Source: Octopus bimaculoides
Taxonomy: Eukaryota
Assembly: GCF_001194135.2 (NCBI RefSeq)
Contig: NC_068985.1
Location: forward strand, 50,429,020 to 50,467,522
Length of the DNA: 38,503 nucleotides
Direction: 5' to 3'
Shown here: positions 563 through 38,503 of the stretch, piece by piece
Position numbering within the stretch: position 1 is the stretch's first letter
Layout of the letters: every line of letters starts with the position of its first letter
Made by a program: the position numbers and the translations under genes
The notes under the pieces: generated by a model
Told to the model about the DNA's origin: nothing
What the model saw: the letters and a program-made list of their open reading frames with translations, nothing else
Database searches by the model: none

Positions 563-751
563 AGAGACAGACAGACAGACAGAAAAAAGGAAAACGTCCC
601 TTGCATTTGAAAGTCATGGAAATGTTTTAAAATATTTCATTTAATTTTTCCACAATTTAATTGTTTTTCATGCTTTACTCTAAGTTGAAATAGTCGCAAA
701 GACTGAAACCGGTACTAAAATGTTCTTGATGATAAAATTATTTTAGCATTT
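563..751 (+). repeat. Dispersed ~170-190 bp repeat, copy 1 (copy 2 at 38334-38503)
   Basis: Shares CAGAAAAAAGGAAAACGTC.CTTGCATTTGAAA, ATTTCATTTAATTTTTCCACAATTTAATTGTTTTTCAT.CTTTACTCTAAGTTG and GATAAAATTATTTTAGCATTT with the window end, in the same orientation. Confidence 0.9.
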
Positions 752-1155
752 TCTACCTTCTTGTCTTGTTTTCCATATATATATATATTATATATATATA
801 TATAGTGAATAAATAAATGGGATAATTATCCCCTTATACAGCACAACTCATTAGTGCCCTAATAGAGCCTCAAGAATATCAAACTAAGAAAGAGAACAAA
901 TTTCAAAGTTCATATTCACTTAATATATTTCAAAGCATCGGAATACTCCACAGCATACATAGGTGCATTCATATACACAAGATATAATATAAAAATTATT
1001 AATATATAAATGTATAAATGTACTTGCGAGGTTGTATGTCCTTATTTAAATCAATGAGGATATTAAAATATGCAGTGAATGTATAGCGGTAATCCAAATA
1101 GATGAGAAAGTTGGTATAAAATGATTTTAAAAGGAATCTTGAGCAGGTGCAAAGT

Positions 1156-1239
1156 CTGACGGCCGTTTCGAGAAGATATAGGTTGGTATGGGCGAGTTAA
1201 TTCCAACCATAACAATCAACTATATCTCTCTCATCAGAG
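1156..1239 (-). ncRNA. Type I hammerhead ribozyme motif with intact core, long stem II and palindromic stem III
   Basis: Minus strand: CT-CTGATGA-GAGAGATATAG...CTATATCTTCTC-GAAAC-GGCC-GTC-AG. All core nucleotides are canonical, with a GUC triplet. Stem II has 11 bp with one bulge and further pairing beyond. Stem III is the palindrome ACGGCCGT. Stem I is only 2 bp. Confidence 0.75.
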
Positions 1240-1330: not shown

Positions 1331-1349
1331 TCGGAACATACTGTTCAGA
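1331..1349. repeat. 19-bp target-site duplication, left copy (TCGGAACATACTGTTCAGA)
   Basis: Exact match to 4513-4531; the two copies bracket the Tx1-like LINE at 1350-4512. Confidence 0.85.
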
Positions 1350-1574
1350 TTTTTTATTACCCTCTAGGGGTCAAAAAGCAGAGATTGTACAATCTGACGA
1401 GTCAGATGATTTACATAGAGATGAAATGGTTTTTTTAAAAAATTTATGACAAAGTAATTCGAATGATTAAACAAAGACACAAAAACAATGAAGTGGGGGT
1501 GGGGTACGGCTTCTGCTTCGACCCCACAAGCCCCTGATACCTAAGGTAAATCTTTTATGGAATAGTCATGAGGG

Positions 1575-2405
1575 TACATTCATTCGCAACATCCGTACCC
1601 CACTCTTCCATCTTTTCCAGAACACAACAGCTGACAGGCATCTCCTCTCCAGCCCTATATTCCTTTTCAGACGAAAAGTGAAACAAGTACAGGGCCAGAG
1701 ATGACGTTGCCGGTCACAAATCCTTTCATTCTGGAGGCAGGTGGGTCATTTTTCACATTTGACTCAGCGGACAGCTGTACTCTTCCAATACTTAACAACA
1801 GTTGTTCGACATAAGTCCACAGATCCGACACGCCTGGACATTGCACAATCGCATGCAGGATGGTTTCCTTATCTCACACGCATCTTGGGCAAATCTCTGA
1901 GCCGGGGCAGCCATGCCTTGTGAGCTTATCCCGAACAGGTAAGGCTCCTAGGTAACACTGCCAGGCCAAGGACTTCTGAAAATTATCCAGGGACCCCGAC
2001 CTGAATGTTCTTCAGAACAGGCTAGGATCTCCCTTCAGGTATCAGCACACTTCGACTCTACCATCCCTCTATAGAATGATATAGTTGAACCACCACCATC
2101 GGCATTGCCTGAACGATAGAAAAGTACGAGAGCCTTTCGGCATTCAGCGTACCACGTGCCCAACTTAGATCTACGATAGACCCAGGATTTCAGTCCACAA
2201 AAACGTTGAACTTAGAAAACGTCGATTTAGAGGGCGGAGTCCACACCCGTTCACCATCCAGATAGAGTTACAGATGCTTCAGCCATAGCGCATGTCTGCC
2301 CATCATCAAGCACGGCATCCCTAGCCCACCCATTAACGGTTGTTGGCAGCAGATAGAGTGCCTCAGAAGTGGTCCTGTGCCCTTCCACAAAAAGCGAAAG
2401 AGCCG
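1575..2405 (-). pseudogene. LINE A ORF2 C-terminal region (post-RT and zf-RVT-like), frameshifted
   Basis: Translations RRLFRFLWKGTGPLLRHSICCQQPLMGGLGMPCLMMGRHALWLKHL and EICPRCV*DKETILHAIVQCPGVSDLWTYVEQLL are typical of the L1/Tx1 ORF2 3' part. Confidence 0.8.
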
Positions 2406-2972
2406 TCGCTATTTGACTATGTCCACAATGGAGCGTTCAGGAATTCCAGTCTGTAAGGATCTGCTAGCGACTTAGCAGATCCAGGAGGCAAGAGTTACCT
2501 CTCCTGTCTTGGTTTGAGTCAGCATAATCTACATGTGCATCGTTGATTGCATTACAGTCTATCAGAACTAATGAGTGTGAAGTACTTAGAAATTTCTCGA
2601 GGCCTCGAAAATACTCACTTTTACCATCGTTAGTTGGTGCATAAATTACTACCAGCCTGATTGTCGTACCGTTGCTGAACGTCAAGTCTAGGACGACCAG
2701 CCTACCTTTTGGATCAATAGAAATGAACTTTTCTCAGAAACCAGATTTTTCTTAATTAGAACCAAGACACCTGTTCCACTCATAGTATGTCATGAAGAAA
2801 TAAATTTCTCATAACCATTTAGCAGTTGGAGCAAGTCTCTTGGTTCAGTCAACCTGATTTCAGTAGCAACAATAGCATCCAATCCACATGACCTGATGTC
2901 GTTAAGAAAACGTCCTTGTTTCCAGCTCGACATCAGCCCACGCACATTTAAACAGCCAACATGAATACTCAT
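2406..2972 (-). pseudogene. LINE A APE-type endonuclease remnant
   Basis: MSIHVGCLNVRGL...DAIVATEIRL (NVRG and E motifs), IRLVVIYAP, LVLIDCNA (GDFN-like), LADPYRLEFLNAPLWT*SNSDG. Confidence 0.85.
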
Positions 2973-3022
2973 AAGCGACTTACCGTTTTTGTGGTGAGAG
3001 ATGGGCTGTTATGACCATCTCT

Positions 3023-3984
3023 TTATTGAACTACGCTTGCTTGCGGGATGATGTTAGATGGGCCCTCGAAAATTTGGTGGGAAATGTCTCTCCGTAGAGG
3101 GTCTATATTATGGTGAAATTCTGATTTCAGAATCCTAAAATTCTTACTGTCAATTGCAAATATCTTTATCCGTTTCGGGGTTTTATTGTATTCAACAGAT
3201 TCTGCCGTTGGAACAACAGCCAACCTGCTTAACAGTCTTGTATTATTTTCTTTGATCGCTATCAGGTTGCAGTCATTTTTCTTTGTTGTTGGTTTCTTTT
3301 TCTTGTGAGTATGTGTTGAAAAAGTTGAAATGATGGGATGTGGGTGCCTTCTTTTCCCACTATTTTTATACTCCACCCCTCGCCCTTCTCTTTGTCATTG
3401 GTTTTGTCTACCATTACGGGGGATTCTGTATCTATTGTAGTTGCTGTTCTTGTTGATTCTTCCTCTTCCTCTTCTGAATGTGGGGGAACTACCGCTTTTT
3501 CTTGGGGTGGACCGCACTCTGCCCTTATGTGGCTTTTTTGCCACACTTGAAGCAACGACACTTTCTCCCCTCTATTATTACAATTAATCTGAGTCCCCCA
3601 CCTGAATGATTTCAGGTATTTCTTCTGAATCAGCAGGGGCCGCTTGAATCGCAATTTCAAGCCCTTGCCAATTTTGTTTATCGGTTGTTGTTGCTTGCGG
3701 GATGGGAATTTTATCCTCCAAGCCGACAACTGTTGTTGCCACTAACCAGGCAGCATCTACTTCTGGCGGGACTTCGGTAACTCTATTTTTGACGTTCTTC
3801 TCCCCAAGTACGTGAGGAGAAGAACCACTTCTTCCGGCTTTAAAGTATTAGTCGAATGCTGCATGGATTTCTCTTCACCGTGGAATCTCACCTCAATGGC
3901 AGCAAACTTCTTCGCTCGTGTTATATAAATTATGTGAGACCAAATTGGTCTAAGACACTTTTCCACCGCATCTCTCGACGCCAT
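3023..3984 (-). pseudogene. LINE A ORF1 (gag-like) remnant
   Basis: MASRDAVEKCLRPIWSHIIYITRAKK...LLTYLGRRTSKI, and a degenerate zinc knuckle (..KSHIRAEC) near 3520-3570; homologous to ORF1 of element B. Confidence 0.7.
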
Positions 3985-4512
3985 GTCATGTTCCTTATAT
4001 TTTTACGATAAACGTTTTGTTGATGACCGTTGTTCTATTCGTTTGGTGAGAGATTTTGCTTGGAGGAGTTATTTGCACTTCCAGCCCCTCCTTTTTCAGC
4101 ATCCCTTTAAACTTCATTATTTCATTTAGATTGGTATTAAGATTTCTTTTAGTTATTCCTGCTGCTGCAGCAAAATTAAATTTTGTTGCAGTTAGAGACT
4201 TCACCGGTGGTATATCCACTGCTTCTTTATTTTCAGATTCAATTGAGTCGTACATTTTTCAAAGGATTTGGGCTGATGCCCCACAAAATTACGGCTAAAC
4301 GCCGCGTAAATTTGAGCCAACGCTCTGCAGAAAAACAATGACTCACCTTTCAAACAACGGGAAATTATAAGAAAAGAACTGCCGCAAGCAGTTACACCAG
4401 TTTTTTCAACAACACGAAATGTAACAAGTTCGGTAACAGGTTCAATAACAGGTTCAATAATAAACTAACCAAACAGCAAAAATTACAACCTAACTTCAGA
4501 ATGAGCGAAATG

Positions 4513-4531
4513 TCGGAACATACTGTTCAGA
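4513..4531. repeat. 19-bp target-site duplication, right copy
   Basis: Exact match to 1331-1349; sits between the 5' end of LINE A and the 3' end of LINE B. Confidence 0.85.
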
Positions 4532-6480
4532 CGGATGATATTAATTTTCTATTACCCACAAGGAGTCAGATAAAGAGGGGACAAGCAAAGACCAACAGGA
4601 CAGTACAAAGTAGGGACACAAAAAAAAAAAAAAAAAAAACCGATGAGAGGATGAATGAAATAATTAAAATAAATAATGAAATGGAGTCGCTCCTCCTCAC
4701 ATCCGAACGACTTAATTTATCTTTTTTTTACTTTTTGAAACTTTCAAAAATGTCTATTTTAAAATCGTTTATGAGATCTTCGTAACTTACCACCGTTGGC
4801 ATACCCTCGGTGTCCATTCCTCTCTGCCAGTACACCATGTTGCTTCCATACCCTTTCAGTCCCACAGTGTGAATAGTGTCCTGTGAGCACCTCCTTCAAA
4901 CCTGTAGTGATCACTGATATACGTTTCGTCCAGCTGTACACCCTTTATCACAGTTTGCCATTGTGTTGATTGTAGAGTACTATGCTCTTTTTTTTTTTTT
5001 TTTCACAGGCTGGGGACTAGAGAATTTGGGGCTCCTGTATGTTTATAATCGTTTTGTTAATGTCTGTTGGGGTAGGGCGTAGTTTGGTGTCTGCAAGGGA
5101 AGAGTGGAACGAAGTGGTTCGGGTGGGAGTTGGGTAGACGTGGGATTGGGGTCTTCATTTATAGTTTGTACTTTTTCCTCCTTTTTTGCTTCTCCTTGTT
5201 GTCGTTTCACATTCGTCTCTGTGTTTCCTCCTTCTTTTTATGTACTTCTGTTGCTCTTCGCCGTTGGTGGAGGTGCAGTTTTTTTTCAGACACTGGCGCT
5301 TCTTGGGGATTTTGGGGCGACGGAAGGCACTCTACCCAAATGTGGCCTTTTTGGCCACATTTGTAGCAGCGAGGAGTTATGCTCTCCACTCTGGCCCTGA
5401 GCGTTATCTCATCTACCGTAATTGTTTCCGTTATTTCCTAAAGGTCCTCTGGGGTTGCCTGAACCGCCCTATTCAGTGTCTGCCCTGCCAATTTCAGTGG
5501 GTAGTGCTAGTGGCTTGGAGGACCGTTATTTTATCCTCCAAACCCAGCAGTATCGCTGCCACCAGCCAGGTTACATTAATTTCTGGTAATGCCTTTTCTA
5601 CCCTTAACCTGGAAGCACGCGTTCCAAGGTTTTTGAGTAGACGAATTACCTCCTCGGTTTTCAGGAAGGCGTGGTTGCCGAGAGTCGCCTGGATGTGGCT
5701 TCGACTCAGAGCCGCACCTCCATCATTCCAAACTTTCTTTCTCCCACTGGCTATGTGTGTAATTTCCTGCCAGATAGGTTTTTAAGCCTTTTCGATTTGC
5801 CCTTTTGTTATTATCTCTATTCTCTGTGCATTCACCGAATACGTTCTGTAGCTGATCATTTTTCTCTTTGCCTCCTGTAATACTTCTTGGAGAGGTGATA
5901 CCTTTTCGTCATTCCCCTCCCTGCGAGGCATATACTTGTAGTTTTCTATCTCGTCCATATTGACTTCCGAGTTGTGGCTTTTGGCCACCGCCACAAAATT
6001 CCTTCTTCTTTCCTCTCCTTTGTCCATTTCATCAAGTGCTTGGAGTTACTCGTCTTTGGACGAACTCAGCGTTTCGTATTCCACCATCTTCTTTACTGTG
6101 TTACCCACTTCAAGTAAGGGAGAACATGTCAACAAAACTACCGTAAGGCAGCAAAAACAAGCGTGAGTTCTCCGTTGTGGTCGGTTCTGACTTGGGCCGT
6201 CGTAATGTTTATATCTTGTTTGGACGAGGTGGTCATTGTGAAAGATATGTCTCGAGCGGGATAAATTTTTACTTCTTCCTTGTTCCTGTTCCAAGACTTC
6301 ATTATGTGGAATGTGTCTCGAACGTGGGGAGTTCTTATTTCTCGTATAGTTCTGTCCGAAAGACTTATTCATGAAGACATTCCGTCTGAGACATGGAGGG
6401 TTCTTGGGATGAGATGGGTTTCTGTATCTTTGAATTGGAGTGTTTTGTCTTGTGGTGAAGGGTGATTTCATTCAGATATC
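4532..6480 (-). mobile_element. Tx1/L1-type LINE B, divergent relative of A (ORF1 with CCHC, A16 run, putative ORF2 C-terminus, 3' UTR; no EN/RT)
   Basis: ORF1 pieces 5782..6027 and KPIWQEITHI...LLKNLGTRASRL align with A. Intact CX2CX4HX4C (RCYKCGQKGHIWVEC) at ~5325-5370. The 3' end CTTGTGGGTAATAGAAAA resembles A's CCTAGAGGGTAATAAAAA. The ORF2 tail (4760-4950) is a weaker call. Confidence 0.7.
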
Positions 6481-6591
6481 TCATGCTCTGGAAGAAGAAC
6501 CATGGTCACTAGGGAATCATTTTTTCTATTGTTTAGGGATATTGTGCACAGCAGAAAATTAATTGCACAGGCAAAATTTATATATATATAT

Positions 6592-7010
6592 ATGAGGTGT
6601 TGTGTGCAAGAGAGAAGACTGTGCTGGTTTAGTCATGTGATGAATATGGATGAGGACCGCTGTGTAAAGTAGAGATCCATGAAGATGTGGAACAAAGTGG
6701 AGAAAAGGGATCTTTGCATGCCGGGCTTCACTGAGGAGAGGACAAGGGACTGGGAATTTTGGTGATTTGCTGTACTTGATAAAATGCGTCAAGCTAAGTA
6801 GAATCACTGTCTTCCACACATACAGGCTTGCACTTTCAGGTGTTGGTGCCACTTAAAAAGCGCCCATGCCAGTGCTGCATTAAAGTATCCATGCTGGTGC
6901 TATGGAAAAGCACCCATGCCAGTGGCACGTAAAAAGCACGACTGTTAAGTAGTTGGCATTAGGGAGGGCATCCAGTCATAGAAACCATGCCACAACTGAC
7001 AATTATAGTC
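6592..7010 (+). mobile_element. RTE-clade LINE 3' fragment (ORF C-terminus + 3' UTR)
   Basis: RCCVQERRLCWFSHVMNMDEDRCVK...DLCMPGFTEERTRDW matches the RTE RRLRWFGHV C-terminal motif. It is followed by repeated AAAAAGCACCCATGCCAGTG units and TTGGCATTAGGGAGGGCATCCAG typical of RTE 3' UTRs. Confidence 0.75.
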
Positions 7011-7464
7011 TGGACAGCTCCCTGCTAGCCAGTCCCATGTCAGACAGTTTGTTCTCGATGGAACATGAAGTGGGTGCTCCCTGTTATTGTACCATCACCA
7101 GAGGCAAGTACCTTGTATACAGTAAATGTGAATGCAGAGAATACTCAGTAAACCAAGGTGTGTAGACAAAAGAGGAGAATTGCTGAGTGTGTAATGACAG
7201 CAGAGAGACCAGAAATGGTTTGTTGATCTATGCTGGTATCTCTCATATGATGATAAATCCTCGTGTATACAATGGATAGTGAGAATCAAAATGATAACTT
7301 TATTCTTAATATGTTCTGGTATATTTGAATATTGAATATGCGAATCGATTGCCGTTTGGTAATTATGATACTTCTTCTACAATTGAAGATAATTTTAATA
7401 AACAAAGAATTTATGTATTATGGTATTTGATACTTGTCTTTTGTCTATGTTGTTCATATAAATG

Positions 7465-7610
7465 CCAGTACCAGGCAGAGGAGGTTTCCAGCAGTAACAA
7501 CAGCAACGACAGCAGTAACAGAACCGTAAGAATAAATAAATGGGAATATATCGGCGGAACAGGATAGTCCTTCAAGACCAGAGCTAATAACCACAAGTCA
7601 CCTCTTACAA
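7465..7610 (+). mobile_element. Penelope-like GIY-YIG endonuclease fragment
   Basis: YQAEEVSS...EYIGGTG*SFKTRANNHKS resembles the PLE motif Y.A.V...YIG.T...FK.R..NH.S. Confidence 0.5.
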
Positions 7611-7847
7611 TAATAGTGTTGTGATAAGAGTCAAGATACCCTCTTGTGAGGAATGGACTGAACCGAGAAAGTATATATGGTTCGAAGTTCGTGTTATTTA
7701 ACAGTGAAGACAAAGCATATAACACATTGTAAAGCAATGTGAATATATACATTCATAGGCAAAAAAGATTCATACATATAAAATATAAAGCATAAATCGC
7801 TATATAGAGACGTGTACGCACACATAGACGCACACATTCTCTGTTTT

Positions 7848-7895
<48 letters not shown>

Positions 7896-8275
7896 TTACT
7901 GTCTCACCTCATCTCTTTTTTTTTATCTTTCAAAATATCTGCGTTTGTTCTTCTCTGCTAACGTACGAGAATCATTTCATCTAACAGAAGGAACATCGTT
8001 GAGATACCTACGCCAGTTCAACAACAATCTACCATCACCACCAAAACAACAACAACAACTACAAGGTCAACTCAACCTGCGTTACCAACTTCTCACAAGT
8101 TCTCAGAAATGCTTGATAAATTTAAGTCTGCTGTTTATTTCATCTCTATTTACCACCCACTAGCAATTACAACGAGTATCAACATTTCTAACTACCTATC
8201 AACGTATTGGTGGCTTGGTTGATGAAGCCAAGTACGAGAAAATATTTGCAGCTTGTTCCTGTAAAATTTGTTGCA

Positions 8276-9437: not shown

Positions 9438-9844
9438 NNNNNNNNNNNNNNNNNNNNNNNNNNNNNNNNNNNNNNNNNNNNNNNNNNNNNNNNNNNNNNN
9501 NNNNNNNNNNNNNNNNNNNNNNNNNNNNNNNNNNNNNNNNNNNNNNNNNNNNNNNNNNNNNNNNNNNNNNNNNNNNNNNNNNNNNNNNNNNNNNNNNNNN
9601 NNNNNNNNNNNNNNNNNNNNNNNNNNNNNNNNNNNNNNNNNNNNNNNNNNNNNNNNNNNNNNNNNNNNNNNNNNNNNNNNNNNNNNNNNNNNNNNNNNNN
9701 NNNNNNNNNNNNNNNNNNNNNNNNNNNNNNNNNNNNNNNNNNNNNNNNNNNNNNNNNNNNNNNNNNNNNNNNNNNNNNNNNNNNNNNNNNNNNNNNNNNN
9801 NNNNNNNNNNNNNNNNNNNNNNNNNNNNNNNNNNNNNNNNNNNN
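9438..9844. other. Assembly gap (other N-runs: 10756-11573, 15840-15849, 18706-19102, 21912-22050, 25285-25294, 26369-27241, 28586-28650, 31961-32493, 36212-36495)
   Basis: N characters; most gaps are flanked by microsatellites or TE ends. Confidence 0.99.
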
Positions 9845-16345: not shown

Positions 16346-16904
16346 AGAATTTTTTTTTTAAAAAGGAAAGTGTGTCTTGAGGGAAGCGATTGATCCGCTG
16401 TATTTTAACTTTTATGGGGGTACCGAGCTAGCATTTATGCAGGTATATAATGTCATCGTTGTCGGTGGCGGTGATCGTAATCCATCGGGGTCGAGAATAA
16501 CAGCTTTTATGGACCCGTATGTGACTATGTAGGCTAATGCGGGTTACAGAATCGGTTATTTAATGAGGCGTTATGTTTGTTGCTTAGCACTGCATTTTAT
16601 GCTCACATTTTACATTCAGATGCTTGTTTCGTGCTGAGGTGATGTTTTGGGCTTCATCATGGCTGATGTTTTCCACTTATGCCGTTCATTCGCCAACGAT
16701 CCCCACTCGTATAATATTCATGCCACATGTTTTCGAATTTCAATTTCCTTTAAGTACGTTTTTGAACCGCTTTCTTTATCCGACTTACTTGGTTTTCCTT
16801 CATTCAGTTGCGACTAAAATAGTTGTTAGAAAAATCCATGGCTTAATACTCGCAACACACATTGACTCATTCACTCTCCCCACCCCTTTCTCTCTTTCTG
16901 CGCT

Positions 16905-17240
16905 CCCCTCCCCTCCACACTGCAACCTGCTTGACTGCAAAGCCCCTTAATTATGGTGTGTGGGACGCAGTTGAGCGAGAGATTAACAAAACTCCTTGTA
17001 ACACTAAAGATGAACTGAAGGCAAGGATTATGGCAGCACTTACCAACTTAAACAAGGAGACCGTCCAGAAGAGTTGTAGGAGATTCCGAAGTTGTCTGCA
17101 GGCCGTGGTTGAAGCCAATGGTGATTTTATTGAATAAATTTACTCTGTATTTTTTGGTAAATATAGCTGTTAAAAATGAGACATCAGTGTTATTTTCATT
17201 TTTACGTAATTTAGACGGCAATTCATTCACCGCACCCTGT
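16905..17240 (+). mobile_element. Tc1/mariner (maT-like) 3' end with right TIR and TA
   Basis: PLNYGVWDAVEREINKTPCNTKDELKARIMAA...RRFRSCLQAVVEANGDFIE*, then TIR-like GACGGCAATTCATTCACCGCACCCTG followed by TA. Confidence 0.85.
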
Positions 17241-19899: not shown

Positions 19900-21795
19900 C
19901 ATCATGGCGCCGTCAACATCAGACGTGCAGTTATAGAAGACCTTTTTAAAAGTCCGTCTTGAACGCCTTCCTCTAGAAATACGCCGACTTCTCTATCGGT
20001 AAGTGGTTTATTTCTCCAATAATTAATAAGAGAAACACCTTTTATTCACCAACGTAGCGTTATCCTGAACAGATTTTGAAATATACAACTACACCACCTG
20101 GAATCTAGCTAACACGATTATGGCTGAAACTAACACCACCACACATGAAACTAACAATGTCACCACCGATGAAAACAGAACTACTTCACCAGTAAGCTAT
20201 TTAAGAAGACGTAAGTACTCTTCTCATTTTACTTAGACTCAACAACTAAACCAAGATTTACTTCGGTGCTAAGAAAAAGCCCGAGATGACCCTTCAATCG
20301 GATACATGAAGCTGTTAAAACAATACTGGGACGAAGCTCATCCCAACTTAAATACCTTCACGGCGAAACAGCTCCGACAACAAGCATGTGAAACAATGAG
20401 AATGGGCCAAAATCTGCTAGAAGCGGCGTAAAAAAATAATGTAAACAGACCACCGCTCCCGCCATAGCTAAATTCGAGTGTGTCTCCAAATTTAACTGAC
20501 TCAGTAGCGAAGACTGCGGAATGCATCCAACTCAAAAACATTTTAAAATTATAATTCCCCCAAAATTTTATTACTTTCTAGAAGCTTTCTTTGAGCAACA
20601 GACCATTCCCAACAAGAGTGAGAAAAAATCCGACCGATCTAATGTTTAAAGTTATCAACGATGTTGCTGGAGAGCACATGGAATCATGTGAAGTTAATTA
20701 CTGCAATATTTCATACTCTTATATACACAGCCGCTATTACTCATAAAGAACACCTAGGAGAAATCTACAGTGAACAAAGTAACGAAATTACTAAACGGAA
20801 ACACCGAGATGGAAAACAAAACTTGAAGAAAACTTCAACAACGTGCGCCGCCATATTGGATGGTCAACTACAACAATAAAATGTAAGGAGAAAAATAAGT
20901 TTACACTTCACCAACTCTACCTTAGACAAAAACGAATGAAACTTTATGGCAATTCTTCACACCGAGCTCTTGAGGGAAAGCTAATCACTTTAAAACATGA
21001 ACTCAGGACGATGAGCGAGAAACTCTGCTATCGCATGCGAATTTTTGAGCGAACCAGTATCAATCGCAAGTTTGCTTCCAACCCACAAGCATTATACAGA
21101 GAGATCAGGAAGGAAAATATTACCATTAAGAAAGCTCCCTCCCAAGAAGATCTACAATCATTCTGGTCATAAATTTGGAACGAAAAGAGTGATTTTAACC
21201 TGAACACATCATAATTAAATACAATTGCGAAAGAATACTGTACCAACACTAACAGTAAAACATACAAAGTTGATGCATACAAAATCGATGCAGAAACCTT
21301 CGCTATATCAGCAGGCATACTGCAGAATAGGAAGGCACCTGTAAGGGACCTAATAGTTGGATATTAATACAAGAAGGTGACATTTTATAGAAACCAATTG
21401 ATATGTATGTTCAAAAGAACTAATGGAAGGTCAGAACTGGTATACCAAATTCGTTTGCTACAGCAAGGACCAATCTTGTTGCCAAAAATGAAACCACCGA
21501 AATGGCAGGAAACTACAAGCCCATTGCTTGCCTAAACATTATGTAGAAACTGTACACAAGTTGCCTCAACCAAATCCTCCAGGACCATTGTGAGTCGAAC
21601 AACATTGTGACTGATGAACAAGCTGGTGGAAAGAAGGGAATGTGGGGTGGTGCCGAACAACTTTTAATAAAAAAAAAAAAGCGGTACTGTGTGAAGTAAG
21701 AAAACGACGTAGAAATCCTGTAACTGTGGCTCAACTATAACAAGGCTTTCGACTCTATCCTTCATTCATGGCCGTTGAAGTGCCTACATCTGGCA
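19900..21795 (+). mobile_element. R4/Dong-type non-LTR retrotransposon, 5' half (N-terminal region + RT domains 0-3), decayed
   Basis: RRRKYS...GYMKLLKQYWDEAHP; INRKFASNPQALYREI...SFWS*IW; KAPVRDLI.GY; GNYKPIACLN; EQAGGKKGMWG..EQLLIN; KAFDSI.HSW. Truncated by a (TACA)n tract. Confidence 0.85.
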
Positions 21796-22269: not shown

Positions 22270-22790
22270 ATAATAACAGCATCGAAAAATACTTTCGGAA
22301 TGAGAACCCAGGTTTGAAATTTCCCCAAGACACCTGATGAAGGCTGGAGGGTATATCAGCCGAAACGTTGTGTTAACAACAAACAAGATGAGGGCAAATA
22401 TCCGTCAAATGTAAATAATGTACATAATTCCTCATCTCTTAAATATAGATCTATATGGGTCAATATATGAACACAAAACCGGGAAAATATTCACAAACGC
22501 ATATATGAACTGCAAAAGCAGAAATTTATTTGACTGCATCAAATGTCCAAATTGTGAAGAATTACATGTAGGTCCGACTGGAAATGCACTGTCAGAACGT
22601 TCAGGTGTGCACCAACAGCAAGTTAGAGACCCAGGCGTATGTCAGATACCTTTGAATAACCATCTAGCAACATGCGGTCGGAAAATATTTATATTTCCAT
22701 TCTACAAACTACACAGTCCCAGCGAAATTGAAAGAAAAATTAGAGAAAAGAACTTTATTAATAAATTCAAACAATAATACTAATACTTAG
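22270..22790 (+). mobile_element. Penelope-like element remnant: hammerhead-bearing pLTR-like segment + GIY-YIG domain
   Basis: NCKSRNLFDCIKCPNCEELHVGPTGNALSERSGVHQQQVR...HLATC...IFPFYKL...RKIREKNFINKF is a PLE GIY-YIG with CCHH; the hammerhead lies about 80 bp upstream. Confidence 0.8.
22329..22374 (+). ncRNA. Minimal type I hammerhead ribozyme motif
   Basis: GACAC-CTGATGA-A-GGCTG-gagggtatat-CAGCC-GAAAC-GTT-GTGTT. Stem I 5 bp (one G-U), stem II 5 bp, extra A after A9, loopless palindromic stem III (ACGT), GUU triplet. Confidence 0.8.
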
Positions 22791-28699: not shown

Positions 28700-29560
28700 A
28701 ATAAAAAAATAACTTATGTGTCTAAGTTTAAGCATCTTCGCCTTCGAAATAGTCACATTGCCCAGCAATGCTTCGGTCCCAGCATTTCTACCACTTTTGG
28801 AATCCGGCCTGGAAGTCGTTTTGCGTTAGCGAATTGAGGACGTTCTGCGATTCGCTCTGGATCTCGACAACGGTATTAAAACAGCGACCTCTGAGCTGCA
28901 TTTTCATCTTGAAGACCAGATAGAAGTCCGCAAGTGCTAAATCTGATAAACAAGGCAGATTCGGAGGCGATGCCATGTTGTTTTTGGTGAGAAACTAACG
29001 AATGATGAGAGCTCGATGAAGAATCCAATTCTTCGTACGGCACAAATCCTGTCGCGTTGGCCGAATATCCTCCCTCAAACACTTCAAAATGTCGCAGTAG
29101 AACGCTCGATTGATGGTCTGACCCTAGGGGACGAATTCTCGATGCACAATATCATATTTCCGAGGTTTATGCTCTTGGTAGGTCTTCCGGATCGCTCATC
29201 GCCTTCCAGGAACGTTCTTCTGCTTTCGAAGAGCCCGTGCCACCCAAAACATTGCATACAACCCATTGCCTCGCCGTAAGCTTGCCGGTGCTTGCTCAAT
29301 ATCTCTGTAGCGGACTTGCTAAGTTTAACGCAAAATTTCGCGCTAGCTCTTTGTTCCTGTCCATGAAAAAATCGCATACTACAGCATACACTTTAACACA
29401 AAGACACAAATTTCACAATTTGCAAACTGAGCACAGAGATGTTACTTGGCACACTCTCCCATGAAGGTCACTACTAGCCCTCATTGCGCACGCCACCGTG
29501 TGCTGCCAACTGACGGCGCGCTACAGACCTAGACAGTGAACTTTGTTATACCATCTCATA
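28700..29560 (-). mobile_element. Mariner (DD34D) element, internally deleted, one TIR retained
   Basis: EQRASAKFCVKL.KSATE...DERSGRP (N-terminus), IVHREFVP*GQTIN..FYC, SDLALADFYL..KMKMQL.GR.F (YSPDLAP.DF) and DYFEG. TIR-like TA-TGAGATGGTATAACAAAGTTC at 29538-29560. Confidence 0.88.
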
Positions 29561-33754: not shown

Positions 33755-35997
33755 TATTATTCAAGACATCGCACAGAATCCAATATCGTGATGTTGTTGA
33801 TTGAAGGTATTGTGTCTACCGGGGGTTTGTACTGTCTGTCAAGTCACAGCAGGGACCGCAGGCAGACAATACTTTAGGCAATATATATGCAGTTTTTTGC
33901 AATACACCTAAATTGTAGGGTATTTCTAAAGTTTCCAGTTGGTTCTTCAGGTTGGGTGGTATTGAACCAAATGCTCCAATGACAATAGGGACAACCTTTA
34001 TGCTTGACTCTCGTAGCTGCCACATCTTGGCGATCTCAATTCTCAGGTCTCCATATTTATCAATCTTTTCTCTTTCTTTCATATGTTGATCTCTTGGCAC
34101 TGCCACGTCGATTATTAGGCTCTCTTGTTTGTCCCTCCTAAAGGTTACTATATCCGGCTTTCGGGTGCTCTAACACCTCGTCTGCCTGGAAGTCAAAGTC
34201 CGAGAGGAATTTTGCCTTCTTTTTGTCCATTATCTTTACCGGTGTATGTTGGTACCAAACACCTGTTAACTCGTATCTCTAATTCCGGCATAGTAGCCAG
34301 TGATGGTTTGGGGTTACTTTGTCGTGTCTACTCTTGAACTCTGCGCAAGGCTTTCACAAGGGGTTTCTTCTCTCTCGCTGGCTGTTCATGATCGGAACTC
34401 ATGAGCTCTCTGAAGTCCATTTTTGGGAAGTTCATCTGCATTAGCAGCATACTGTAGCAGGTCTTTGTTGTTTACAAAATATTCTGCCATGTTTCTTCTT
34501 TCACCGTTGATGCACTCCAGTACACTTATCAGCTCACGTCCACCTTTACACTTCTTCATGTAGAGCCTGTGTACATTCATCTTAAAGTGGAAGGCACCAT
34601 GCATTGTCATTGTATTTCGGGTAGTGCAATCGAGTTGGTTAACCTCCACTCGTGTCCATTTCAGGATAGGTGCACTATAGCGGATTACAGCAACAGCCCA
34701 TATGTTGACGGCGGTCACAAGTTTCCTTGAGTTGAGTTTTGATTTCAAGAGAAGTTTGAGGCGCTTGAAATATGCAGTGATGACCTTGTCTTTCATTTCA
34801 CTGTGCAAGATATTGTCCAGCTCCAGGATCCCAAGATACTTGTACCCACCATCATCCGGGTCTTCTATTCTCTCTCCGTTTGGCAATTCTCTGTCCTTAC
34901 AATCTGATCTTTTCCCCCGTTTCAAAGTGAGCACTGCACACTCCCTGACACCGAATTTGAACCCTATATCCTTGCTGCACATCTGGACAGTCTCAATCAG
35001 GCACTCCACTTCAGGATCTCTTTTTGAGAACATATTTAAATCATCCCTAAAGAGAAGATGGTTGAGACGGGGTCCATTCTTTCTCAGCTCATTGCACGTT
35101 GACTTTGCGTAGGACAACAGAAAGTGGGATCATGGCTATAATAAATAAACAAAGGTGAACAAGAATCTCACTGGAAAACACCTCTCTTAATTGTTACCTC
35201 GGCAAAGTACTGGTTATTACAGAAAAGACGTGTTTTCAAACTAGGCATGCAGTTCTTAATCAGTGTACACATGCTCTCAGCTATTCCATACATGTCGAGT
35301 GTTTCCAAAATCCATGAATGCGGCAATCTATCGTAAGCCTTTTTAAAGTTTATCCAGGCTATGCACAAGTTTTTTTTTGGTACCGTTTACTGTTCTTCAT
35401 TACAACCTTGTCTATCACAAGGTTTTCTTTAGTGCCCTTGGATCCTTTTCGGCATCCCTTTTGTTCTACTGCAAGTAGATTGTTTTCTGCAAGGAGCGTA
35501 TATATTTTTCCTGCGAGGATGCGGTTAACACTTTCCACAGGAGGTTAAGACAAGCAATGGATCGGTAATTGCCAACCTCATTGCCCTCCGACCGACCTCT
35601 CATCAACAATGTTGTTTTCCCCTTTATAATCCACTCCGGATCTGCACCACTCTGTAGGCAACTGTCTACTTGCAACACAATTTGCTTGTGTGTTGACCTA
35701 AACCACATGAACCAGTAGCCTTGAATTCTGTCTGGTCTTGCCACTTTCCAGTTTGGCAGTTTTGATTCTTGTGCAATTACATCTCCCATTGTTATGCGCA
35801 CATAGTTTTGTTATGGAGCCTCCCAGTGATGGAGTTCGGATCTCACGGAATGTATCCACTCAACACACTGGTTGTGGGAAACTTCTTGCCTCCAGATGCC
35901 GAGTTTCCTCTGCTTCAGGGGGTATAATATCTTCTGTATCTCCTTCTAAGCTCTAAAACAAACTGCCTCTGGTTATTTGAGAATCACCGGTTTTGCT
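33755..35997 (-). mobile_element. R4/Dong-type non-LTR retrotransposon, 5'-truncated (RT + RLE), decayed
   Basis: PNWKV.RPD.IQGYW; GNYRSIACLNLLWK; FKKAYDRLPHSW; LNHLLFRDDL (YMDD box); GYKYLGI; EFKSRHDKV; LIIDVAVP...EKIDKY.DL..EI..MW...VVPIVIGA.G. The 5' end abuts (AAT)n. Confidence 0.92.
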
Positions 35998-38333: not shown

Positions 38334-38503
38334 GAGACAGAGACAGGCAGAAAAAAGGAAAACGTCTCTTGCATTTGAAAACTATGGAAATATATTTTTT
38401 TAAAAAGACATTTCATTTAATTTTTCCACAATTTAATTGTTTTTCATACTTTACTCTAAGTTGGAAAAGTCGCAATGACTGGATAAAATTATTTTAGCAT
38501 TTT
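38334..38503 (+). repeat. Dispersed repeat, copy 2 (copy 1 at 563-751)
   Basis: Same orientation; lacks a ~26-bp internal segment present in copy 1 and carries a small insertion. Confidence 0.9.

What the first reader, a model, noticed from the sequence alone, without database searches (positions are those of the whole stretch)
1331..4560. Two divergent Tx1-like LINEs end at the same 19-bp near-palindromic site: candidate new site-specific LINE family
Seen: TCGGAACATACTGTTCAGA occurs exactly at 1331-1349 and 4513-4531 and brackets LINE A as a TSD. The 19-mer is self-complementary in 7 of 8 pairs (TC-G-GAACA-tac-TGTTC-A-GA). LINE B's 3' end (GGGTAATAGAAAA, like A's GGGTAATAAAAAA) terminates about 13 nt from the right copy, so both elements landed at essentially the same point, head to tail. 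The target lies about 90 bp from the 1156-1239 hammerhead. Known: Tx1-clade APE LINEs are often sequence-specific (Xenopus Tx1 into Tx1D, Keno into U2 snRNA, Dewa into tRNA, Mutsu into 5S). I do not recognise this target as any of those. Inferred: a Tx1 family that targets a palindrome inside a hammerhead-bearing repeat, i.e. a retroelement parasitising another retroelement.
Basis: partly seen in the sequence, partly recalled or inferred. Interest (0 to 1): 0.85.

Follow-up and report, generated by a model that had tools for sequence, protein, structure and literature searches.

The report
Defective LINE inserted beside a relative's tail
A broken copy of an L1-type jumping gene sits between two perfect 19-base duplications right next to the tail of a related broken copy, which looks like ordinary retrotransposon behaviour and gives no good evidence for a new site-specific family.

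Summary
TCGGAACATACTGTTCAGA occurs exactly twice (1331-1349, 4513-4531) and brackets a 3,163-bp minus-strand LINE (A), so it is a target-site duplication. A second LINE-related element (B) ends 8-13 nt from the right copy.

A and B are both defective. A lacks about 1.75 kb of ORF2, including the whole RT. B has ORF1 and a tail but no detectable ORF2. They share ORF1 homology (30% aa) and a conserved 3' tail block.

The same tail block ends a LINE and tRNA-like SINEs in the octopod Argonauta hians. Seven tails there have seven different 3' flanks, and two new copies sit in or 12-16 nt after an older tail.

The RT of relatives is L1-like. Tx1 membership could not be tested.

The site-specific reading is not supported:
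- The two 3' junctions differ in position and sequence.
- There are only two copies.
- The first 3 nt of the duplication match the family tail, which suggests microhomology.
- The hammerhead has the core motifs but no Rfam support.
- Whether the target lies in a repeat cannot be seen.

One point stays unexplained: the 19-mer is unusually palindromic (0.16% of window 19-mers). No other copies from the source genome could be reached. Interest is low.

The parts
1331..1349 (.). Target-site duplication, copy next to LINE A's 3' end
   Evidence: Exact 19-mer, one of only two in the window. It directly follows A's tail on the minus strand.
4513..4531 (.). Target-site duplication, copy next to LINE A's 5' end
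   Evidence: Exact 19-mer. It directly precedes A's 5' UTR on the minus strand.
1350..4512 (-). LINE A: a defective L1-superfamily non-LTR retrotransposon of 3,163 bp
   Evidence: Six-frame translation; Pfam zf-RVT at 33.6 bits; tblastn to P0001-P0008 and P0067; 61.7% DNA identity to the Argonauta LINE over 712 nt.
1350..1373 (-). Conserved 3' tail block of A (CCCCTAGAGGGTAATAAAAAA, containing AATAAA)
   Evidence: 83% identical to B's tail over 24 nt. Aligns to the Argonauta LINE/SINE tail consensus GGCCCTTGTGGCTAATAGAGAAATCTAT.
1557..2408 (-). C-terminal part of A's ORF2 (post-RT region plus CX2CX8HX4C zinc domain), with at least 3 frameshifts
   Evidence: tblastn to P0001-P0008 gives 38-69% local identity in four frame segments; Pfam zf-RVT.
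2408..2467 (-). Internal deletion junction in A: the C-terminal half of the APE and the whole RT (about 584 aa, about 1.75 kb) are missing
   Evidence: P0067 residues 80-162 map to 2706-2467 and residues 747-810 map to 2408-2217.
2467..2952 (-). N-terminal half of A's APE endonuclease domain
   Evidence: Pfam Exo_endo_phos E 0.018, below cutoff; 27-39% identity to the APE part of P0067, P0030 and P0111; 64% DNA identity to the Argonauta LINE APE region over 140 nt.
3490..4255 (-). A's ORF1, with a decayed CCHC knuckle near 3514-3558 and at least 3 frameshifts
   Evidence: Homologous to B's ORF1 and to the Argonauta ORF1 (28.6%, E 2e-25).
4256..4512 (-). A's 5' UTR
   Evidence: The sequence between the duplication and the first ATG of ORF1. 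Inferred.
4532..4544 (.). Spacer between A's duplication and B's GGGTAATAGAAAA. Its B-proximal 5 or more nt (TTAAT...) probably still belong to B's tail.
   Evidence: Alignment of B to the family tail consensus AAATCTAT and to the Argonauta LINE tail AAATTTAAT.
4540..4568 (-). Conserved 3' tail block of B (CTCCTTGTGGGTAATAGAAAATTAAT)
4569..4989 (-). B's 3' region: no ORF2 homology. On the minus strand it is bounded by a T21 run (4620-4640) and an A16 run (4990-5005).
   Evidence: No tblastn hit with 121 relatives; Pfam finds nothing; sequence read.
5210..6027 (-). B's ORF1 with CX2CX4HX4C knuckle (CYKCGQKGHIWVEC, about 5327-5372)
   Evidence: Pfam zf-CCHC at 19.1 bits, just under the cutoff. 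58.6% DNA identity to A's ORF1 over 582 nt.
1158..1237 (-). Hammerhead-like motif (CUGAUGAG, long helix II, CGAAAC-GGCC-GUC)
   Evidence: Motif scan: 2 strict matches in the window against 0.125 expected. Helix II appears in the MFE fold. No Rfam match.
575..752 (+). Start of a dispersed repeat whose second copy (38345-38503) is cut off by the window end. It may or may not extend to the insertion site.
   Evidence: About 90% identity.

Best explanation
LINE A is a non-autonomous, RT-less copy of an L1-superfamily retrotransposon family that has relatives in octopods. It integrated by ordinary target-primed reverse transcription.

Inferred steps of the insertion:
1. The + strand was nicked after ...CTGTTCAGA.
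2. Its 3' end AGA paired with the UCU at the end of the family's RNA tail (...AAAUCU).
3. cDNA synthesis started there.
4. The other strand was cut 19 bp away, giving the 19-bp duplication.

The insertion lies a few nucleotides downstream of the tail of a related defective element, B. This LINE/SINE group tends to integrate in or just beyond tails that are already in the genome. That habit probably comes from a short-motif or microhomology preference of a tail-dependent ('stringent') reverse transcriptase. It does not require recognition of the 19-bp palindrome. The order in which A and B inserted is not known.

Shown: the duplication, the anatomy of A and B, the tail homology, the varied flanks in relatives, and the repeated tail-adjacent insertions in Argonauta.

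Inferred: the nick positions, the 3-nt pairing, mobilisation in trans, and the tail-adjacency preference as the cause of the arrangement.
For: - A perfect 19-bp duplication flanks an element with a 5' UTR, ORF1, partial ORF2 and a tail carrying AATAAA.
- A and B tails align with the tail shared by an Argonauta hians LINE and its tRNA-like SINEs, and the consensus continues ...GAAATCTAT. A reads ...AAAAAATCT|GAAC, so the first 3 nt of the duplication equal the tail's end.
- In Argonauta locus L004, seven tails have seven unrelated 3' flanks.
- SINE copy u3 has a 13-nt duplication, CTATTTCAAGGAA, that begins with the tail's CTAT and lies 12-16 nt after the tail of copy u5. Copy u2 begins 2 nt after the TCTAT of copy u1. 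So 2 of 7 tails there, and 1 of 2 in the window, have a family member immediately downstream.
- The chance of A landing within about 14 nt downstream of the only other tail in 34.8 kb, in the same orientation, is about 2e-4 by my own arithmetic. The adjacency therefore needs a cause, but the recurrence in a non-site-specific relative supplies one.
- A has at least 6 frameshifts, several stops and a 1.75-kb deletion, yet its 38 nt of duplication carry no change. This fits the copying of an already defective master.
Against: - Only one insertion with a duplication is available from the source genome.
- The tail-adjacency preference rests on three cases in two species.
- The Argonauta family is only about 50% identical in protein (about 62% in DNA) to A, and site preference can differ between families.
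- A 3-nt microhomology is expected by chance about 1 time in 64.
- The strong palindromy of the 19-mer (p about 0.002) is not explained by this model.
- Frameshifts could partly be errors in a draft assembly.
Confidence: 0.55

Rival explanations
1. Chance neighbourhood. A and B are two independent, unrelated insertion events in DNA dense with transposable elements. Their closeness and the palindromy of the duplication are coincidences that a post hoc reader picked out.
For: - The window is full of TE fragments and microsatellites.
- The palindrome and the adjacency were both noticed after the fact.
- A 19-bp duplication is within the normal range for L1-type elements (established knowledge).
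- The only match to the 19-mer outside the window was a chance hit in a bacterial contig.
Against: - Only two tails of this family occur in 34.8 kb of called sequence, yet they sit within 14 nt of each other in the same orientation. By my arithmetic that has a probability of about 2e-4.
- The same head-to-tail pattern recurs in the Argonauta locus.
Confidence: 0.25
2. A and B belong to a site-specific Tx1-type lineage whose endonuclease recognises the near-palindromic 19-mer. It would cut both strands after TGTTCNGA, and the site would lie inside a hammerhead-bearing repeat.
For: - The 19-mer is palindromic in 7 of 9 pairs, which is rare (0.16% of non-simple window 19-mers).
- As a consequence, both inferred nick sites read TGTTC(A/C)GA^.
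- B's tail is 8-13 nt away.
- A dispersed repeat begins about 750 nt away and could extend over the site.
- Many Tx1 families are target-specific, and some target other transposons (PMC4494074).
Against: - The 3' junctions of A and B are at different nucleotides and in different sequence. Site-specific LINEs share one junction.
- No duplication was found for B.
- No second copy of the 19-mer or its flanks exists in the window, even with 3 mismatches.
- Relatives with the same tail have varied flanks.
- The symmetry of the nick sites is the same fact as the palindrome, not independent support.
- The hammerhead gets no Rfam support and is linked to the site by distance only.
Confidence: 0.07
3. 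The 19-mer, or part of it, belongs to the element rather than the target. For example, it could be a read-through or transduced 3' extension carried by all copies of A's lineage.
For: The first 3 nt (TCT) coincide with the family tail consensus AAATCT(AT).
Against: - The remaining 16 nt have no counterpart after any of the nine other tails examined.
- The second copy lies exactly at A's 5' end, as expected for a duplication. A 3' extension would not explain that.
Confidence: 0.05

Closest known systems
L1-superfamily (L1/Tx1 group) APE-type non-LTR retrotransposons
   Same: - ORF1 with a CCHC knuckle.
- ORF2 with an N-terminal APE and a C-terminal CX2CX8HX4C zinc domain (Pfam zf-RVT).
- AATAAA at the 3' end.
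- A 19-bp target-site duplication.
- The RT of the nearest intact relative (P0007) matches human L1 ORF2p far better than R2 (E 3e-50 against 4e-24).
   Different: - A has lost its RT, and B has no ORF2.
- The tail is a conserved sequence block with almost no poly(A). It is shared with tRNA-like SINEs, which is the 'stringent' style of 3'-end recognition rather than the poly(A)-dependent mode of mammalian L1.
Site-specific Tx1-clade families (Tx1 into Tx1D, Keno into U2 snRNA genes, Kibi/Koshi into microsatellites, Tx1-Mar into Mariner-N4_AMi; PMC4494074)
   Same: The domain layout is compatible. The proposed idea of a LINE that targets another repeat has precedent in this clade.
   Different: Those families are defined by many copies that share one junction in one target. 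Here the two junctions differ, and relatives show varied flanks. Clade membership was not tested.
HAL1-type (ORF1-only) and other internally deleted LINE derivatives mobilised in trans
   Same: B keeps ORF1 plus the 3' tail but no ORF2. A keeps ORF1, fragments of ORF2 and the tail. A's perfect duplication alongside heavy coding decay suggests it was copied from an already defective master.
   Different: It is not shown that the deletions predate insertion. No other copies carrying the same deletions were available.
Insertion of L1/Alu into the A-rich tails of older elements, and LINE/SINE partners sharing a 3' tail (Kajikawa and Okada 2002, as cited in PMC4494074)
   Same: New copies land in or just after the tails of older copies, and the target begins with bases matching the RNA's 3' end. 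SINEs share the LINE tail (Argonauta).
   Different: The tail here is a specific block (..TTGTGGSTAATARAGAAATCTAT), not poly(A). The offset of about 8-16 nt seen twice is not a described rule.

Membership tests
L1-superfamily APE-type LINE | N-terminal apurinic/apyrimidinic-type endonuclease in ORF2 | tested here: inconclusive
   Only the N-terminal half is present in A. Pfam Exo_endo_phos gives E 0.018 and 15.3 bits against a cutoff of 24.5. There is 27-39% identity to the APE part of relatives that carry PF03372.
L1-superfamily APE-type LINE | Reverse transcriptase domain of L1 type | tested here: not met
   Absent from both copies in the window: deleted in A between 2467 and 2408, and no ORF2 in B. 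Relatives P0007 and P0008, which share A's C-terminal region, have an RT closest to human L1 ORF2p (E 3e-50, against 4e-24 for R2). The family qualifies; these copies are defective.
L1-superfamily APE-type LINE | C-terminal cysteine-histidine zinc domain after the RT | tested here: met
   Pfam zf-RVT at 33.6 bits, above the cutoff of 27.5, E 6e-8. CPRC...H....C is visible.
L1-superfamily APE-type LINE | Target-site duplication and a defined 3' end | tested here: met
   Exact 19-bp duplication. The tail block is conserved across A, B and the Argonauta copies.
Tx1 clade | Placement of the RT within the Tx1 clade in a phylogeny with reference elements | not testable with these tools
   There is no RT in A or B. 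No Tx1 reference sequences or Repbase were available. No named Tx1 protein appeared among the hits.
Site-specific LINE (any clade) | Independent copies share the same 3' junction nucleotide in the same target sequence | tested here: not met
   A's tail is followed by TCTGAACAG. B's tail is followed by (TTAAT)ATCATCCG. The junctions are 8-13 nt apart. This rests on only two copies.
Site-specific LINE (any clade) | The target is a repeated genomic sequence, and empty sites exist elsewhere | tested here: inconclusive
   There is no second 19-mer in the window. The one hit in JGI metagenomes is a chance bacterial match. A repeat starts at about 575, but its extent is unknown. The source genome could not be reached.
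Site-specific LINE (any clade) | Relatives with the same tail show the same target | tested here: not met
   Seven Argonauta tails plus L007 and L008 all have different flanks.
Type-I metazoan/PLE-style hammerhead ribozyme | Catalytic core CUGAUGA ... GAAA ... UH in the right order | tested here: met
   CUGAUGAG...CGAAAC GGCC GUC on the minus strand at 1237-1158. The strict pattern is found 2 times against 0.125 expected.
Type-I metazoan/PLE-style hammerhead ribozyme | Helix II, and a short helix III with a palindromic loop (PMC4209133) | tested here: met
   About 11 bp of helix II in the MFE fold. ACGGCCGU is self-complementary (read). The feature is described in PMC4209133.
Type-I metazoan/PLE-style hammerhead ribozyme | Helix I of about 6 bp, a match to a curated covariance model, and a partner copy nearby for the dimeric form | tested here: not met
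   Only 2 bp can be drawn for helix I (read). There is no Rfam hammerhead hit at E up to 10. The fold z-score is -1.33. The only other motif is 21 kb away.

The most novel reading that the evidence does not exclude
The endonuclease of this cephalopod L1/Tx1-like lineage is sequence-specific for a palindromic site. It would nick both strands after TGTTCNGA, giving a fixed 19-bp duplication. The site would sit in a dispersed repeat that carries a type-I hammerhead. A and B would then be two hits on neighbouring positions of one target unit.
Probability: 0.06. Interest if true: 0.5.

Novelty: new member of a known kind. Interest (0 to 1): 0.15.

Why it matters
As it stands, little. This is a standard retrotransposon insertion next to a relative, in a repeat-rich genome that is probably an octopod's.

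Two modest points may interest transposon specialists:
- A LINE lineage and tRNA-like SINEs in octopods share a conserved, nearly poly(A)-less tail block. New copies repeatedly land in or about 10 nt beyond older tails.
- RT-less and ORF2-less derivatives seem to have been mobilised in trans.

If the palindrome were a true recognition site, it would add a new target type to the site-specific L1/Tx1 elements. It would also offer a natural endonuclease that cuts symmetrically on both strands. Site-specific Tx1 families that live inside other transposons are already known, however.

Tried and rejected
- **Copies from the source genome.**
  - A protein search with A's stitched ORF2 gave only 6 hits, all at 46% identity or less.
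  - A profile of the ORF1 sequences of A, B and Argonauta gave no hits.
  - Ten window ORFs are not in the protein collection.
  - No genome-wide table of 3' flanks could therefore be made.
- **The 19-mer in JGI metagenomes.** One hit, a bacterial contig with unrelated flanks, so a chance match.
- **The degenerate tail pattern in IMG/VR.** Nothing found.
- **A duplication for B.** No k-mer of 11 nt or more from B's downstream flank recurs in the right orientation between 5,900 and the N gap at 9,438.
- **ENA contig L006, from a 43%-identical RT.** Unrelated organism, no tails and no similarity to the window.
- **Rfam for the hammerhead.** No hit at gathering threshold or at E values up to 1 and up to 10. 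The second motif at 22334 also got no hit.
- **Chimeric insertion by template switching, or 5' transduction, as the cause of the B-A arrangement.** Rejected, because the 5' copy of the duplication lies between B and A rather than upstream of B.
- **Tandem array whose units each begin with the 19-mer.** Rejected, because the sequences after the two 19-mers diverge at once.
- **Pfam on other window ORFs that look TE-derived by eye.** No significant families.
- **Whole-window repeat search.** Dominated by microsatellites and N runs, so not informative.

Full report
**1. The observation**

The 19-mer TCGGAACATACTGTTCAGA is present exactly twice, at 1331-1349 and 4513-4531. No further matches appear with up to 3 mismatches, and none of 100 shuffles gave two matches. 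The bases just outside the two copies differ, so the repeat is exactly 19 bp. It is palindromic in 7 of 9 symmetric pairs. Only 40 of 25,289 non-simple 19-mers in the window (0.16%) are as palindromic. GGGTAATAAAAAA and GGGTAATAGAAAA (minus strand) are at 1362-1350 and 4558-4546, and TATTACCC occurs nowhere else in the window.

**2. LINE A (1350-4512, minus strand)**

Six-frame translation and comparison with relatives give this layout:

| Part | Window coordinates |
|---|---|
| 5' UTR | 4512-4256 |
| ORF1, with a decayed CCHC knuckle | 4255-3490 |
| N-terminal half of an APE endonuclease | 2952-2467 |
| Post-RT 'FLWKG...GGLGMP' region plus zinc domain | 2408-1557 |
| 3' UTR ending in AATAAA plus three A | about 200 nt, to 1350 |

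- The zinc domain is CX2CX8HX4C and matches Pfam zf-RVT at 33.6 bits, above the cutoff.
- Relative P0067 maps with residues 80-162 at 2706-2467 and residues 747-810 at 2408-2217. About 584 residues are therefore missing, which removes the rest of the APE and the whole RT.
- The remaining coding sequence has at least six frameshifts and several stops.

A is a genuine LINE bracketed by a genuine target-site duplication, but it cannot move on its own.

**3. Element B**

- Upstream of A on the minus strand lies an ORF1 (6027-5210) with an intact CX2CX4HX4C knuckle.
- It is 30% identical in protein to A's ORF1 (E 5e-29) and 58.6% identical in DNA over 582 nt.
- It is followed by an A16 run, about 350 nt with no similarity to any ORF2, a T21 run, and about 75 nt ending CTCCTTGTGGGTAATAGAAAATTAAT.
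- B therefore has ORF1 and a tail but no ORF2.
- I could not find its 5' end or a duplication for it. I cannot say whether the ORF1 part and the tail part were always one element.

**4. Relatives and likely host**

- The closest proteins to A's C-terminal region are P0001-P0008, at 45-69% local identity.
- P0008 is annotated in the octopod Argonauta hians, and a more distant hit is from a cuttlefish. Together with the N gaps, about 36% GC and many microsatellites, this suggests a cephalopod genome, probably an octopod. That assignment is an inference.
- The RT of P0007 matches human L1 ORF2p (E 3e-50) much better than R2 (E 4e-24). The family therefore belongs to the L1 superfamily.
- Whether it is Tx1 clade could not be tested. 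There is no RT in the window copies and no reference set was available.

**5. The tail in Argonauta**

The Argonauta locus L004 holds a LINE with ORF1 at 3153-3857, ORF2 at 4591-8010 and a 3' UTR. A aligns to it at 61.7% DNA identity over 712 nt.

- The LINE's tail recurs seven times in 14 kb. Most copies sit at the ends of about 245-nt tRNA-like SINEs.
- The tail consensus is ...GGCCCTTGTGGCTAATAGAGAAATCTAT.
- The tails of A and B align to this block:
  - A: CCCCTAGAGGGTAATAAAAAATCT|GAAC
  - B: CTCCTTGTGGGTAATAGAAAATTAAT|ATC

Two things follow.
The gap to A's duplication is then 8 nt or less.
- The first three bases of A's duplication (TCT) equal the end of the family tail. The nicked + strand end ...CAGA-3' could pair with the RNA end ...AAAUCU-3', which is ordinary microhomology-assisted priming.

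**6. Test of site specificity in relatives**

- The seven Argonauta tails are followed by seven unrelated sequences.
- Two further contigs of the same family end in other contexts. One is followed by (ATT)n (L008) and one reads CAACACACAC (L007).
- None resembles the 19-mer.
- Head-to-tail neighbours do recur:
  - SINE u3 has a 13-nt duplication, CTATTTCAAGGAA. It starts with the tail's CTAT and lies 12-16 nt after the tail of u5.
  - SINE u2 starts 2 nt after the TCTAT of u1.
- Thus 2 of 7 tails in Argonauta and 1 of 2 in the window have a family member immediately downstream.
- By my arithmetic, A landing within 14 nt downstream of the only other tail in 34.8 kb, in the same orientation, has a probability of about 2e-4. 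The closeness is probably not chance, but it matches a habit seen in a relative that is not site-specific.

**7. Why the site-specific reading fails on present evidence**

- Site-specific LINEs are recognised by many copies sharing one junction (Tx1, Keno, Kibi, Koshi, Tx1-Mar; PMC4494074).
- Here the two 3' junctions lie at different nucleotides, 8-13 nt apart, in different sequence.
- B has no identifiable duplication, and the sample is two copies.
- No second copy of the 19-mer or its flanks exists in the window.
- The single external match is a chance bacterial hit.
- Both inferred nick sites read TGTTC(A/C)GA^, but that is the same fact as the palindrome, not an extra one.
- The palindromy itself (p about 0.002, noted post hoc) remains unexplained.

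**8. The hammerhead and the 'repeat'**

- The minus strand at 1237-1158 reads CUGAUGAG, a helix II of about 11 bp with a long insertion, then CGAAAC-GGCC-GUC.
- The short helix III with a palindromic loop is typical of metazoan type-I hammerheads, which act as dimers (PMC4209133).
- Against it:
  - Helix I can form only 2 bp.
  - The fold is not unusually stable (z = -1.33).
  - Rfam finds no hammerhead at any threshold.
- The hammerhead is therefore a plausible motif and nothing more.
- A dispersed repeat does begin near 575. It is about 90% identical to 38345-38503, but that second copy is cut off by the end of the window. Whether the repeat reaches the hammerhead or the insertion site cannot be seen.

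**9. Mechanism and verdict**

Most likely (about 0.55), A is an already defective family member that was mobilised in trans. It integrated by target-primed reverse transcription a few nucleotides beyond the tail of a relative, helped by a 3-nt match between the target and the RNA tail. This reflects a tail-adjacent insertion habit of this LINE/SINE group.

| Reading | Probability |
|---|---|
| Tail-adjacent TPRT insertion of a defective copy | about 0.55 |
| Pure coincidence | about 0.25 |
| True site-specific palindrome-targeting family | about 0.06-0.07 |
| The 19-mer is part of the element | about 0.05 |

The finding is a correct observation with an over-reaching interpretation. It is a new member of a known kind and of low interest. 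The decisive test is a genome-wide table of 3' flanks in the source assembly, and it could not be run because no other copies from that genome were reachable.

Noticed in passing
window 22334-22369 (+), with ORF 22415-22774 (+): A second, compact hammerhead-like motif, CTGATGA-A-GGCTG...CAGCC-GAAAC-GTT, of the minimal Penelope-element style. It lies just upstream of an ORF whose CX2C...GPTGNALSERSGVH stretch looks GIY-YIG-like by eye. Rfam and Pfam give no hit.
   Followed up: partly
window 575-752 and 38345-38503: A dispersed repeat at about 90% identity, with a 25-nt indel. The second copy is cut off by the window end, so its full extent, and any link to the hammerhead or the insertion site, is unknown.
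   Followed up: partly
L004 9616-9860 (-), 10819-11063 (+), 11074-11313 (+): In Argonauta hians, tRNA-like SINEs of about 245 nt end in the same tail block as the LINE (GGCCCTTGTGGCTAATAGAGAAATCTAT). This is a LINE/SINE partnership by shared tail. Two of the SINEs sit head-to-tail.
   Followed up: partly
window 1350-4512 with 1331-1349 and 4513-4531: A's 38 nt of duplication carry no change, while its coding sequence has at least 6 frameshifts, several stops and a 1.75-kb deletion. This suggests it was copied from an already dead master, that is, mobilised in trans.
   Followed up: partly
window 4620-4640 and 4990-5005: On the minus strand, an A16 run and a T21 run bracket a segment of about 350 nt inside element B that has no recognisable homology. 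Its origin is unexplained. It could be an inserted piece, or expanded homopolymers in a UTR.
   Followed up: no
window 1333-1347 / 4515-4529: The core of the 19-mer, GGAACAtacTGTTCA, resembles the inverted-repeat steroid-receptor response element AGAACAnnnTGTTCT (from memory). This is probably a coincidence.
   Followed up: no
L008 1990-2105: In a metagenome contig of the same LINE family, the tail ...CCCTTGTGGCCAATAAAAGAAATC runs straight into a long (ATT)n array. Either the tail ends in this repeat or the copy inserted into a microsatellite.
   Followed up: no
window 33819-35810 (-), 20795-21169 (+), 16847-17134 (+), 29087-29392 (-): Other ORF fragments look TE-derived by eye. There is an RT-like fragment with FRDD and YKYLGI motifs, and there are mariner/Tc1-like pieces. 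Pfam gave no significant match for any of them. Ten N gaps show that the window is a draft assembly.
   Followed up: partly
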